From NCBI RefSeq assembly GCF_006345805.1, contig NC_043010.1, positions 30,380,001 through 30,444,000 of the forward strand: a DNA stretch of 64,000 nt. The letters run 5' to 3'. Of the stretch, positions 51,310 through 52,966 are shown in pieces. The notes under the pieces are model-generated. The model saw nothing but the letters and a program-made list of their open reading frames with translations. It was not told the origin of the DNA and made no database searches. The DNA comes from Octopus sinensis (lineage: Eukaryota). The position numbers and the translations under genes were made by a program. The stretch's first letter is position 1; every line of letters begins with the position of its first letter.

Positions 51310-51372
<63 letters not shown>

Positions 51373-51526
51373 AACCCACGCTGGTGGAAAGGGGAGAACA
51401 GAAATTTTTCTCTTGCATATTTGAGTTAGCTAGCACTGTTAGTTGGGAACAGATCTTCAGAAGCGATAACAAGCCGAAAGGGTATGCTCCCATTTTCAGT
51501 GTTTTCAAACTCAAACAAGGGCATTC

Positions 51527-51579
51527 TGAGCTGATGAGAGAAGGGTCGAATTTGGCTAATCTTGAAACGTACGTACTCA
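51527..51579 (+). ncRNA. Type I hammerhead ribozyme, array copy 1
   Basis: TGAG-CTGATGA(51531-37)-helix II-GAAA(51564-67)-CG TA CG-TA-CTCA; helix I TGAG/CTCA; cleavage triplet GUA, predicted cut after 51575. Confidence 0.9.
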
Positions 51580-52078
51580 AATAACCTTTGCATTTGATTT
51601 TTTAATGTCTCTACCCTCATACTTTCTTGGGTTGAATTGAGCAAGCACTATATGAGAGAGGTTTTCTTTAAGTGTTAGAAATAGTTTTTTTAGCTGCTAT
51701 TTCTAACGAGTTCAGTATGCGGCAAAGTAATTTATTTTACTAAGCCCTTTTATATAATGTAATAATTTGAATTTGCCTTAAATGGTCCCTTTGCATACTG
51801 AATACTTGGTGAAATTGATTAATTAATTAATTAATTTTACCCTCAATTGTTGAAATTATAATTCATCTCTCTCTACTTATTTGTCTTGGATTTTACCGAA
51901 AAAAAGATAGTGTTTGCTGATTTTAACCCACGCTGGTGGAAAGGGGAGAACAGAAATTTTTCTCTTGCATATTTGAGTTAGCTAGCACTGTTAGTTGGGA
52001 ACAGATCTTCAGAAGCGATAACAAGCCGAAAGGGTATGCTCCCATTTTCAGTGTTTTCAAACTCAAACAAGGGCATTC

Positions 52079-52130
52079 TGAGCTGATGAGAGAAGGTCGA
52101 ATTTGGCTAATCTTGAAACGTACGTACTCA
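52079..52130 (+). ncRNA. Type I hammerhead ribozyme, array copy 2
   Basis: CTGATGA 52083-89, GAAA 52115-18, predicted cut after 52126; helix II GAGA-A-GGTCG-AATT-TGGCT-AA-TCTT. Confidence 0.9.
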
Positions 52131-52628
52131 AATAACCTTTGCATTTGATTTTTTAATGTCTCTACCCTCATACTTTCTTGGGTTGAATTGAGCAAGCACT
52201 ATATGAGAGAGGTTTTCTTTAAGTGTTAGAAATAGTTTTTTTAGCTGCTATTTCTAACGAGTTCAGTATGCGGCAAAGTAATTATTTTACTAAGCCCTTT
52301 TATATAATGTAATAATTTGAATTTGCCTTAAATGGTCCCTTTGCATACTGAATACTTGGTGAAATTGATTAATTAATTAATTAATTTTACCCTCAATTGT
52401 TGAAATTATAATTCATCTCTCTCTACTTATTTGTCTTGGATTTTACCGAAAAAAAGATAGTGTTTGCTGATTTTAACCCACGCTGGTGGAAAGGGGAGAA
52501 CAGAAATTTTTCTCTTGCATATTTGAGTTAGCTAGCACTGTTAGTTGGGAACAGATCTTCAGAAGCGATAACAAGCCGAAAGGGTATGCTCCCATTTTCA
52601 GTGTTTTCAAACTCAAACAAGGGCATTC

Positions 52629-52680
52629 TGAGCTGATGAGAGAAGGTCGAATTTGGCTAATCTTGAAACGTACGTACTCA
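52629..52680 (+). ncRNA. Type I hammerhead ribozyme, array copy 3
   Basis: CTGATGA 52633-39, GAAA 52665-68, predicted cut after 52676; identical to copy 2. Confidence 0.9.
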
Positions 52681-52966
52681 AATAACCTTTGCATTTGATT
52701 TTTTAATGTCTCTACCCTCATACTTTCTTGGGTTGAATTGAGCAAGCACTATATGAGAGAGGTTTTCTTTAAGTGTTAGAAATAGTTTTTTTAGCTGCTA
52801 TTTCTAACGAGTTCAGTATGCGGCAAAGTAATTTATTTTACTAAGCCCTTTTATATAATGTAATAATTTGAATTTGCCTAAATGGTCCCTTTGCATACTG
52901 AATACTTGGTGAAATTGATTAATTAATTAATTAATTTTACCCTCAATTGTTGAAATATATATATAT

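What the first reader, a model, noticed from the sequence alone, without database searches (positions are those of the whole stretch)
51369..52956. Retrozyme-like tandem array of hammerhead ribozymes predicting a ~550 nt self-processed circular RNA
Seen: three head-to-tail 550-552 bp units, each with a complete type I hammerhead (helix I TGAG/CTCA, core CTGATGA and GAAA, helix II, GUA site). Predicted cuts after 51575, 52126 and 52676 would excise monomers of 551 nt (51576-52126) and 550 nt (52127-52676). Established: animal non-LTR retrozymes are non-coding tandem repeats with type I hammerheads; their multimeric transcripts self-cleave to monomers that circularise, and they are thought to be mobilised by Penelope-like elements. 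Inference: this is such an element in a probable cephalopod. Its monomer seems longer than the few-hundred-nt animal retrozymes I recall. It could instead be tandem pLTRs of a Penelope element, but no RT or GIY-YIG sequence adjoins it. I cannot verify whether it has been described.
Basis: partly seen in the sequence, partly recalled or inferred. Interest (0 to 1): 0.92.

Follow-up and report, generated by a model that had tools for sequence, protein, structure and literature searches.

The report
Octopus tandem repeat with hammerhead ribozymes
A very young, non-coding 550-bp repeat (2.9 copies, inserted in a TA microsatellite of the Octopus sinensis genome) has a hammerhead self-cleaving ribozyme motif in every copy; it looks like a cephalopod example of the "retrozyme" circular-RNA retroelements already known from mussels, corals and amphibians, which makes it a new example of a known kind.

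Summary
Window 51370-52956 is 2.88 head-to-tail copies of a 550/551-bp unit with no substitutions and three single-base homopolymer indels. Each copy has a complete type I hammerhead motif on the + strand, with predicted cuts after 51575, 52126 and 52676. My structural descriptor finds these three motifs and nothing else in the window (0.025 expected per shuffled window; 1.5e-4 per shuffled unit).

The unit has 34% G+C, no convincing ORF and no protein homologue. It folds far better than shuffles. (TA)n flanks both ends, and no RT or GIY-YIG lies within 2.75 kb. The host is Octopus sinensis.

The best reading is a candidate metazoan non-LTR retrozyme, a non-autonomous derivative of Penelope-like elements.

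Caveats:
- No Rfam hammerhead model matches, even at E<=10.
- The conserved G10.1-C11.1 pair is a G-U wobble.
- I could retrieve no other genomic copy, so copy number, covariation and the link to Penelope-like elements are untested.
- Transcription, cleavage and circularisation are inferred.

The 550-nt size is not unusual: published retrozyme consensus lengths run from 51 to 972 bp. This is a new member of a known kind, of moderate interest.

The parts
51307..51369 (.). Left flanking (TA)n microsatellite, the presumed insertion target
   Evidence: TRF reports period 2, 31.5 copies; sequence read.
51370..52956 (+). Whole tandem array: 2.88 units of 550/551 bp, 34% G+C, non-coding
   Evidence: Longest ORF is 90 aa with a TTG start. 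No protein homologue in any frame.
51370..51575 (+). Leading partial unit (unit positions 344-550 counted from the cut site), ending at the first predicted cut
   Evidence: BLAST q344-550 = 51368-51575. The array does not start at a ribozyme cut site.
51527..51579 (+). Hammerhead motif 1, minimal extent; cut predicted after A51575; carries one extra G in helix II
   Evidence: Descriptor hit; alignment.
51576..52126 (+). Predicted excised monomer 1 (551 nt)
   Evidence: Lies between the predicted cuts.
52071..52139 (+). Hammerhead motif 2 with extended helix I. Helix I: 4 bp, C bulge, 3 bp, 2x2 internal loop, 4 bp. Core CUGAUGA at 52083-52089. Helix II: 4 bp, 1x2 internal loop, 5 bp, AAUU loop. 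Then GAAA; helix III of 2 bp with a GUAC loop; cut after A52126
   Evidence: helix I beyond 11 bp read from the sequence.
52127..52676 (+). Predicted excised monomer 2 (550 nt); strongly self-paired fold
   Evidence: MFE -157.3 kcal/mol, z = -5.25 against 100 dinucleotide shuffles.
52629..52680 (+). Hammerhead motif 3, minimal extent; cut predicted after A52676
   Evidence: Descriptor hit.
52677..52956 (+). Trailing partial unit (unit positions 1-280). It ends at ...GTTGAAAT, where the full unit would continue TATAAT
   Evidence: There is a short microhomology between the unit's TATAA and the (TA)n flank.
52955..53032 (.). Right flanking (AT)n microsatellite
   Evidence: TRF reports period 2, 40.5 copies.

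Best explanation
This is a recently inserted, non-autonomous retroelement of the metazoan non-LTR retrozyme kind in Octopus sinensis: a tandem array whose 550-nt unit encodes a type I hammerhead ribozyme on the + strand. Proposed mechanism follows. (1) The array is transcribed as a multimer (inferred). (2) Each hammerhead cuts after A17 of the GUA triplet, at 51575, 52126 and 52676. It may act alone, or two copies may pair through the palindromic ACGUACGU to form an 8-bp helix III, the 'double hammerhead'. [quoted passage not shown] (3) Helix I holds the two ends together and a host RtcB-type tRNA ligase closes the circle (inferred from PMC7229834). (4) The circular RNA, or an uncut multimer, is copied for more than one lap by the RT-endonuclease of an autonomous Penelope-like element, which nicks a (TA)n microsatellite. 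That yields a new tandem multimer such as this one (inferred). Shown here: the array, the motif and its non-chance status, the absence of coding capacity, the TA flanks, array ends that do not fall on cut sites, and the self-paired fold. Not shown here: transcription, cleavage, circularisation, mobilisation, and any other copy in the genome.
For: The array has 2.88 near-identical units. All invariant hammerhead core bases are present (C3 U4 G5 A6 U7 G8 A9, G12 A13 A14, A15.1-U16.1, A17) in type I topology. The descriptor hits only these three sites in 64 kb on either strand; 0.025 are expected per shuffled window and 1.5e-4 per shuffled unit. Cofolding two copies gives a double-hammerhead-type topology, with an 8-bp trans helix III and crossed helix I, at -32.2 kcal/mol against 2 x -9.9 for separate monomers. 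In that MFE, helix II sits in the register that is slid 2 nt into the core. Helix III (2 bp plus a tetraloop) is the form described as typical of invertebrate retrozyme hammerheads. An axolotl retrozyme hammerhead with a U-U mismatch at the base of helix II still cleaves, which is a precedent for a non-canonical 10.1-11.1 pair (PMC7229834). G+C is 34%, against the <45-50% stated for retrozymes. The unit has no ORF above 90 aa and no protein homologue in six frames. The monomer is highly self-paired, z = -5.25, as reported for retrozyme circRNAs (PMC7761336). No RT or GIY-YIG lies within 2.75 kb on either side. Both flanks are (TA)n, and pure (TA)>=8 covers only 1.2% of the window. Penelope-like elements show an insertion bias for microsatellites, with (TA)n listed as a preferred target (PMC8557442). 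The array starts at unit position 344 and ends at 280, so its ends are not ribozyme cut sites. That is expected for a circular or multimeric template and not for a cleaved linear monomer. Zero substitutions between units means a young insertion. The host is O. sinensis, and its sister species O. vulgaris has 30 Penelope families counted as recently active (PMC13282606).
Against: No Rfam hammerhead covariance model matches, even at E<=10 on a 91-nt slice. The highly conserved G10.1-C11.1 pair is G-U here. By nearest-neighbour energies the monomeric hammerhead fold is not the MFE (+1.8 against -5.9 kcal/mol). The GAGAGA run lets helix II slide 2 nt into the core, giving a competing register. Only one locus is available. 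Searches for other copies all returned nothing, but the collections searched do not hold unannotated octopus DNA, so this result is uninformative. As a consequence there is no covariation support, no evidence of mobility or copy number, and no tested link to a Penelope-like element. Both strands fold well (z = -5.25 and -4.51), so the fold does not single out the + strand RNA. Animal hammerheads associated with Penelope-like elements have shown low cleavage activity in vitro (PMC4209133).
Confidence: 0.72

Rival explanations
1. The array is the terminal repeat (pLTR) region of an autonomous Penelope-like element, amplified here without the ORF. On this reading it is tandem solo pLTRs or a 5'-truncated multi-unit insertion, not a distinct non-autonomous family.
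For: In animals, hammerheads of this minimalist style (short helix I, long helix II, palindromic helix III) sit in the pLTRs of Penelope-like elements (PMC4209133). Such insertions form partial tandems and prefer microsatellites (PMC8557442). In Xenopus, retrozyme consensus sequences match the pLTRs of Penelope-like elements (bioRxiv 10.64898/2026.07.22.740005).
Against: No RVT or GIY-YIG signal appears in six-frame translations of 48600-51370 and 52950-55700. The only RT fragments in the window are LINE-type and more than 15 kb away. Three consecutive ORF-less units point to a template that had no ORF. The distinction is partly semantic, since retrozymes are now argued to be pLTR derivatives.
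Confidence: 0.15
2. The array is an ordinary local tandem duplication or minisatellite, and the hammerhead-like motif arose by chance and has no RNA function.
For: No Rfam hammerhead hit. G-U at 10.1-11.1. A single locus with no homologues retrieved. The descriptor was written post hoc.
Against: The chance of such a motif in a shuffled unit is about 1.5e-4, and the descriptor finds nothing else in 128 kb of sequence counting both strands. Several features not required by the descriptor are also present: an 8-nt palindrome across helix III, a helix I that extends to about 11 bp, and a helix II of 9 bp. The context matches the known class: tandem, AT-rich, non-coding, TA-flanked.
Confidence: 0.05
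3. The element is a genuine hammerhead-bearing retroelement by descent but is now catalytically dead or silent. On this reading it is a fossil array that produces no circular RNA.
For: The G10.1-U11.1 wobble. A competing helix II register and an unstable monomer fold. Minimal hammerheads of Penelope-like elements cleave poorly in vitro (PMC4209133).
Against: Zero substitutions across 1587 bp indicate a very recent origin from a working template. All invariant core bases are intact in all three copies. G10.1, which carries the metal-binding N7, is retained.
Confidence: 0.15

Closest known systems
Metazoan non-LTR retrozymes (Cervera & de la Pena 2020, PMC7229834), e.g. the ~350-390-bp repeats of the mussel Mytilus galloprovincialis, the 220-240-bp repeats of the coral Acropora, and the 330/350-bp repeats of the axolotl
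   Same: A head-to-tail array of a few-hundred-bp non-coding unit, low G+C, and one type I hammerhead per unit. Helix III is 2 bp plus a tetraloop with a palindromic sequence. There are no LTR, PBS or PPT features. The predicted monomer fold is highly self-paired. The host genome carries Penelope-like elements.
   Different: The unit is longer than the 170-400 nt of the 2020 paper, though within the 51-972 bp reported in 2026. Helix II is long and interrupted (4 bp + 5 bp) where the canonical form is 4 bp plus a loop. The 10.1-11.1 pair is G-U. The canonical loop 1-loop 2 tertiary contact bases are not recognisable. Expression, cleavage and copy number are unknown here. I found no report from cephalopods in the library searched.
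Minimal hammerheads in the pLTRs of Penelope-like elements (Cervera & de la Pena 2014, PMC4209133)
   Same: Short helix I (4-5 bp core), larger than usual helix II, palindromic 15.2-16.2 and loop 3, and a design that favours dimeric action. The (TA)n microsatellite context matches the reported insertion bias of these elements (PMC8557442).
   Different: No RT-GIY-YIG ORF lies between or beside the repeats. The usual unpaired base between A9 and 10.1 is absent. G10.1-C11.1 is replaced by G-U. A real, though short, helix III is present.
Newt satellite 2 and Schistosoma Sm-alpha hammerhead satellites (Epstein & Gall 1987; Ferbeyre 1998; as cited in PMC7229834 and PMC4209133)
   Same: Tandem genomic repeats whose multimeric transcripts are cut to monomers by type I hammerheads with a weak helix III.
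   Different: Those are high-copy satellites with canonical loop-loop contacts. Here only one 2.9-unit array has been seen.
Plant LTR retrozymes (PMC4918200)
   Same: Non-autonomous, hammerhead-delimited, circular-RNA-forming retroelements of 600-1000 nt.
   Different: Plant elements have type III hammerheads inside LTRs, with PBS and PPT, G+C above 55% and 4-bp TSDs. None of these applies here.

Membership tests
Hammerhead ribozyme, type I | Invariant core: C3 U4 G5 A6 N7 G8 A9, G12 A13 A14, A15.1-U16.1, and H17 at the cut site | tested here: met
   CUGAUGA ... GAAA ... GU-A is present in all three copies.
Hammerhead ribozyme, type I | Three helices around the core, with helix I open and helices II and III capped | tested here: met
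   Helix I >=4 bp (about 11 bp with bulge and internal loop), helix II 4+5 bp, helix III 2 bp plus a GUAC loop. More than chance: 1.5e-4 per shuffled unit.
Hammerhead ribozyme, type I | G10.1-C11.1 pair closing helix II (highly conserved, not absolutely invariant) | tested here: not met
   The pair is a G10.1-U11.1 wobble in all three copies. An axolotl retrozyme hammerhead with U-U at this position still cleaves (PMC7229834).
Hammerhead ribozyme, type I | Match to the curated Rfam hammerhead covariance models | tested here: not met
   No hit at gathering score, nor at E<=10 on 1.9 kb or on 91 nt.
Hammerhead ribozyme, type I | Compensatory changes in the helices among homologues | not testable with these tools
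   No homologous copy could be retrieved. The three local copies are identical.
Hammerhead ribozyme, type I | Site-specific self-cleavage | not testable with these tools
   Requires in vitro transcription.
Metazoan non-LTR retrozyme | Head-to-tail tandem repeats (dimer or more) of a short unit, each with a type I hammerhead | tested here: met
   2.88 units and three motifs.
Metazoan non-LTR retrozyme | Non-coding, low G+C (<45-50%), no LTR/PBS/PPT | tested here: met
   34% G+C. Longest ORF 90 aa. No protein homologue in any frame. LTR, PBS and PPT were not specifically searched; no terminal repeats are seen beyond the units themselves.
Metazoan non-LTR retrozyme | Monomer predicted to form a stable, highly self-paired structure | tested here: met
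   MFE -157.3 kcal/mol, z = -5.25. The minus strand also gives z = -4.51.
Metazoan non-LTR retrozyme | Expressed as linear and circular monomeric RNAs | not testable with these tools
   No transcriptome access.
Metazoan non-LTR retrozyme | Multiple dispersed genomic copies (mobility), co-occurring with Penelope-like elements | not testable with these tools
   Only one locus in the window and no access to the rest of the genome. Co-occurrence is known only from the literature on the sister species O. vulgaris (PMC13282606).
Autonomous Penelope-like element (pLTR-ORF-pLTR) | RT plus GIY-YIG ORF between or beside the direct repeats | tested here: not met
   Pfam scans of six-frame translations of both 2.75-kb flanks found no RVT or GIY-YIG. 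The unit itself has no such ORF.
Autonomous Penelope-like element (pLTR-ORF-pLTR) | Insertion into microsatellites, including (TA)n | tested here: met
   (TA)n lies directly on both sides. Background coverage by pure (TA)>=8 is 1.2%.

The most novel reading that the evidence does not exclude
This is a currently active, cephalopod-specific retrozyme family with a variant hammerhead (G10.1-U11.1 wobble and a long, interrupted helix II). Its fresh insertion would preserve the footprint of rolling-circle reverse transcription from a circular RNA: priming by (TA)n microhomology at unit position ~281, 2.9 laps, and ends that lie away from the ribozyme cut site. If so, it would give direct genomic evidence for the retrozyme mobilisation model and for targeting of (TA)n by the endonuclease of a Penelope-like element.
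Probability: 0.3. Interest if true: 0.6.

Novelty: new member of a known kind. Interest (0 to 1): 0.35.

Why it matters
If confirmed, it extends ribozyme-made circular RNAs (retrozymes) to cephalopods. In that lineage RNA biology (massive A-to-I editing) and transposon expansions, including Penelope-like elements, are of special interest. The copy is so young (no substitutions) and its junctions so clean that it could serve as a natural test case for how retrozymes are reverse-transcribed and integrated. The G-U variant at 10.1-11.1 and the long helix II would also add to the known tolerance of the hammerhead fold. It does not change the general picture, which has been in place since 1987 (newt satellite), 2014 (hammerheads in Penelope-like elements) and 2020 (animal retrozymes).

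Tried and rejected
1. Rfam/Infernal at three sensitivities found no hammerhead hit. The weak mir-297 and mir-1277 hits are low-complexity artefacts of the TA repeat.

2. TRF did not report the array because its longest period is 500; the repeat finder and BLAST did.

3. Looking for other copies:
- An exact look-up of the unit's 90-aa ORF found nothing on record.
- A homology search with that ORF found nothing.
- A 1129-aa artificial six-frame read-through of the unit found nothing.
- Exact-pattern scans of metagenome contigs (twice) and viral contigs with the hammerhead sequence returned 0.
These collections do not hold unannotated octopus DNA, so the negatives say nothing about copy number.

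4. I could not obtain a protein query for a Penelope-like element. None is encoded in the window, and the supplements of the relevant papers are not held. I therefore could not fetch O. sinensis Penelope-like element loci to compare their pLTRs.

5. Strand asymmetry of folding. My first estimate (z = -6.5 against -1.1) was wrong because I used + strand shuffles for the - strand. With each strand's own shuffles, both strands are strongly structured (z = -5.25 and -4.51), so I dropped this as evidence for a + strand RNA.

6. A search for other hammerhead or min-HHR motifs in the window, as remnants of Penelope-like elements, found none.

7. A literature search found no paper in the held library linking hammerheads or retrozymes to cephalopods, and no octopus satellite matching this unit.

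Full report
WHAT IS THERE

Window 51370-52956 is a head-to-tail array of a 550/551-bp unit. The repeat finder gives start-to-start spacings of 550-552 bp. BLAST of one unit against the whole window finds two full copies (51576-52126 and 52127-52676), a leading partial copy (51368-51575, unit positions 344-550) and a trailing partial copy (52677-52961, unit positions 1-284). It finds no other copy anywhere in the 64 kb. The array is therefore 2.88 units.

A three-way alignment shows no substitutions. The only differences are three single-base length changes in homopolymer runs: GGG/GG in the helix II part of copy 1, and two T runs. These may be reverse-transcriptase slippage, later mutation or long-read assembly error.

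TRF missed the array only because its longest period is 500. The array is flanked directly by (TA)31 on the left (51307-51369) and (AT)40 on the right (52955-53032).

THE HAMMERHEAD MOTIF

Each unit carries this sequence on the + strand (copies 2 and 3; copy 1 has one extra G in helix II):

5'-AAGGGCAUUC-UGAG-CUGAUGA-GAGA-A-GGUCG-AAUU-UGGCU-AA-UCUU-GAAA-CG-UA-CG-U-A|CUCA-AAUAACCUU

- Core: all invariant bases are present (C3 U4 G5 A6 U7 G8 A9; G12 A13 A14; A15.1-U16.1; A17). The cleavage triplet is GUA.
- Helix I (open, hence type I): 4 bp next to the core, which can continue past a bulged C (3 bp) and a 2x2 internal loop (4 bp).
- Helix II: 4 bp, a 1x2 A/AA internal loop, 5 bp (three of them G-U) and an AAUU loop.
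- Helix III: 2 bp with a GUAC loop. ACGUACGU is an 8-nt palindrome.

I wrote a type I descriptor requiring helix I >=4 bp, helix II >=3 bp, helix III >=2 bp and H17. Dinucleotide shuffles give 0.025 hits per window and 1.5e-4 per unit. A relaxed 'min-HHR' descriptor with a palindromic helix III gives the same three sites. The descriptor was written after I had seen the motif, so the figures are optimistic. On the other side, the palindrome and the extended helices I and II were not required by it and add to the case.

FOLDING

By nearest-neighbour energies the isolated monomeric hammerhead fold is not the optimum (+1.8 against -5.9 kcal/mol). Two copies cofold into a double-hammerhead-type topology, with an 8-bp trans helix III and crossed helix I, at -32.2 kcal/mol against 2 x -9.9 for separate monomers. 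In that cofold, helix II sits in a register slid two bases into the core, which the GAGAGA run allows. This competing register is a caveat.

The excised 550-nt monomer folds to -157.3 kcal/mol, z = -5.25 against 100 dinucleotide shuffles. Helices I and II are compatible with the global fold. The minus strand is also well structured (z = -4.51). The self-complementarity therefore exists at the DNA level and does not single out one strand. An earlier asymmetry figure of mine came from using the wrong shuffles, and I withdraw it.

NEGATIVE OR WEAKENING RESULTS

- No Rfam hammerhead model matches at gathering score, at E<=10 on 1.9 kb or at E<=10 on a 91-nt slice.
- The closing pair of helix II is G10.1-U11.1, not the highly conserved G-C listed as a hallmark even of minimal hammerheads in Penelope-like elements (PMC4209133). 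A precedent exists: the axolotl retrozyme hammerhead HHR_Amex2 has a U-U mismatch at the base of helix II and still cleaves, especially as a dimer (PMC7229834).

CODING CAPACITY AND NEIGHBOURS

- The longest ORF in the unit is 90 aa with a TTG start.
- That ORF has no homologue among 5.8 billion proteins. Neither does a 1129-aa read-through of all six frames of the unit.
- Pfam scans of six-frame translations of 48600-51370 and 52950-55700 found no reverse transcriptase or GIY-YIG.
- The only RT signal in the window is a LINE-type fragment at 7825-8277.

WHAT IT MOST LIKELY IS

Every sequence-level feature published for metazoan non-LTR retrozymes is met: tandem units of a few hundred bp, one type I hammerhead per unit, low G+C (34% here against <45-50%), no ORF, and a highly self-paired monomer (PMC7229834; PMC7761336). 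Helix III (2 bp plus a tetraloop) is the form described as typical of invertebrate retrozyme hammerheads. The short core helix I and long helix II resemble the minimal hammerheads of Penelope-like element pLTRs.

Three further observations fit the proposed mobilisation by Penelope-like elements:
- The insertion lies in a (TA)n microsatellite. Pure (TA)>=8 covers only 1.2% of the window. Penelope-like elements are reported to prefer microsatellites, with (TA)n listed among preferred targets (PMC8557442).
- The array starts at unit position 344 and ends at position 280, counted from the cut site. The template was therefore not a cleaved linear monomer but a circle or an uncut multimer.
- At the right junction the unit would continue TATAAT where the flank reads ATATAT. 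This short microhomology could have primed reverse transcription from a nicked TA repeat (inference).

The sister species O. vulgaris has 30 Penelope families scored as recently active (PMC13282606).

Zero substitutions in about 1,040 aligned inter-unit positions imply a very young array. The O. vulgaris calibration puts JC 0.09 at about 25 My. On that scale my rough upper bound is under about 1 My, unless gene conversion has homogenised the units.

WHAT COULD NOT BE TESTED

I could not reach the rest of the octopus genome. An exact look-up, the protein searches and DNA pattern scans of metagenome and viral collections all returned nothing. Those collections do not contain unannotated octopus DNA, so the negatives are uninformative.

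As a result, copy number, dispersal, covariation in the helices, and whether the unit is also the pLTR of an RT-bearing Penelope-like element all remain open. Transcription, self-cleavage and circularisation are inferences from the class.

COMPARISON WITH WHAT IS KNOWN, AND NOVELTY

The kind is well established:
- hammerhead-bearing satellite transcripts in newts since 1987;
- hammerheads in Penelope-like elements since 2014 (PMC4209133);
- animal retrozymes and their circular RNAs since 2020 (PMC7229834), including a mollusc (mussel);
- a 2026 preprint arguing that retrozymes are non-autonomous pLTR derivatives (10.64898/2026.07.22.740005).

Consensus lengths of 51-972 bp are reported, with a mean of 650 bp in ray-finned fishes.

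I found no paper in the held library that links hammerheads or retrozymes to cephalopods. I therefore class this as a candidate new member of a known kind, with a mildly variant ribozyme (G-U at 10.1-11.1 and a long, interrupted helix II).

VERDICT

- My confidence that this is a genuine hammerhead-bearing retrozyme or Penelope-derived element is about 0.72.
- Interest is about 0.35.

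Noticed in passing
window 24237-25847 (+): A 536-aa open reading frame 100% identical to part of 'uncharacterized protein LOC115219491 [Octopus sinensis]' (649 aa, weak LRR_6 match), with a 64%-identical homologue in Argonauta hians. 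It identifies the host species.
   Followed up: partly
window 53349-53580; also 48855-49087, 47205-47669, 61625-61864, 18417-18646, 4203-4470, 35438-35607, 354-485, 1534-1668: About ten copies (71-91% identity) of a ~230-bp SINE-like repeat. One lies 320 bp to the right of the array. An inverted or tandem pair at 47182-47669 accounts for TRF's 234-bp 'repeat'.
   Followed up: partly
window 7825-8277 (+) and 36267-36614 (+): LINE-type reverse transcriptase fragments. The first matches Pfam RVT_1 (E = 2e-8); the second has a similar motif but no Pfam hit. Neither looks like a Penelope-type RT, and both are far from the array.
   Followed up: partly
window 13484-13984 (-): A fragment of a mariner/Mos1-type transposase (HTH_48, E = 2e-23).
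   Followed up: no
window 21465-21680: A perfect (100%) 102-bp tandem duplication, 2.1 copies. Another very young local repeat, with no ribozyme motif.
   Followed up: no
window 51304-51382 and 52977-53036: Weak Rfam matches to mir-297, mir-1277 and mir-466 fall entirely within the (TA)n flanks. They are low-complexity artefacts with high bias scores and lie far below the gathering thresholds.
   Followed up: yes
window 52127-52676, both strands: The unit is strongly self-complementary on both strands (z = -5.25 and -4.51). It includes a 13-bp perfect hairpin (GUUAGAAAUAG...CUAUUUCUAAC) and a (TTAA)n palindrome, so the structure comes from DNA-level inverted repeats and is not strand-specific.
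   Followed up: yes
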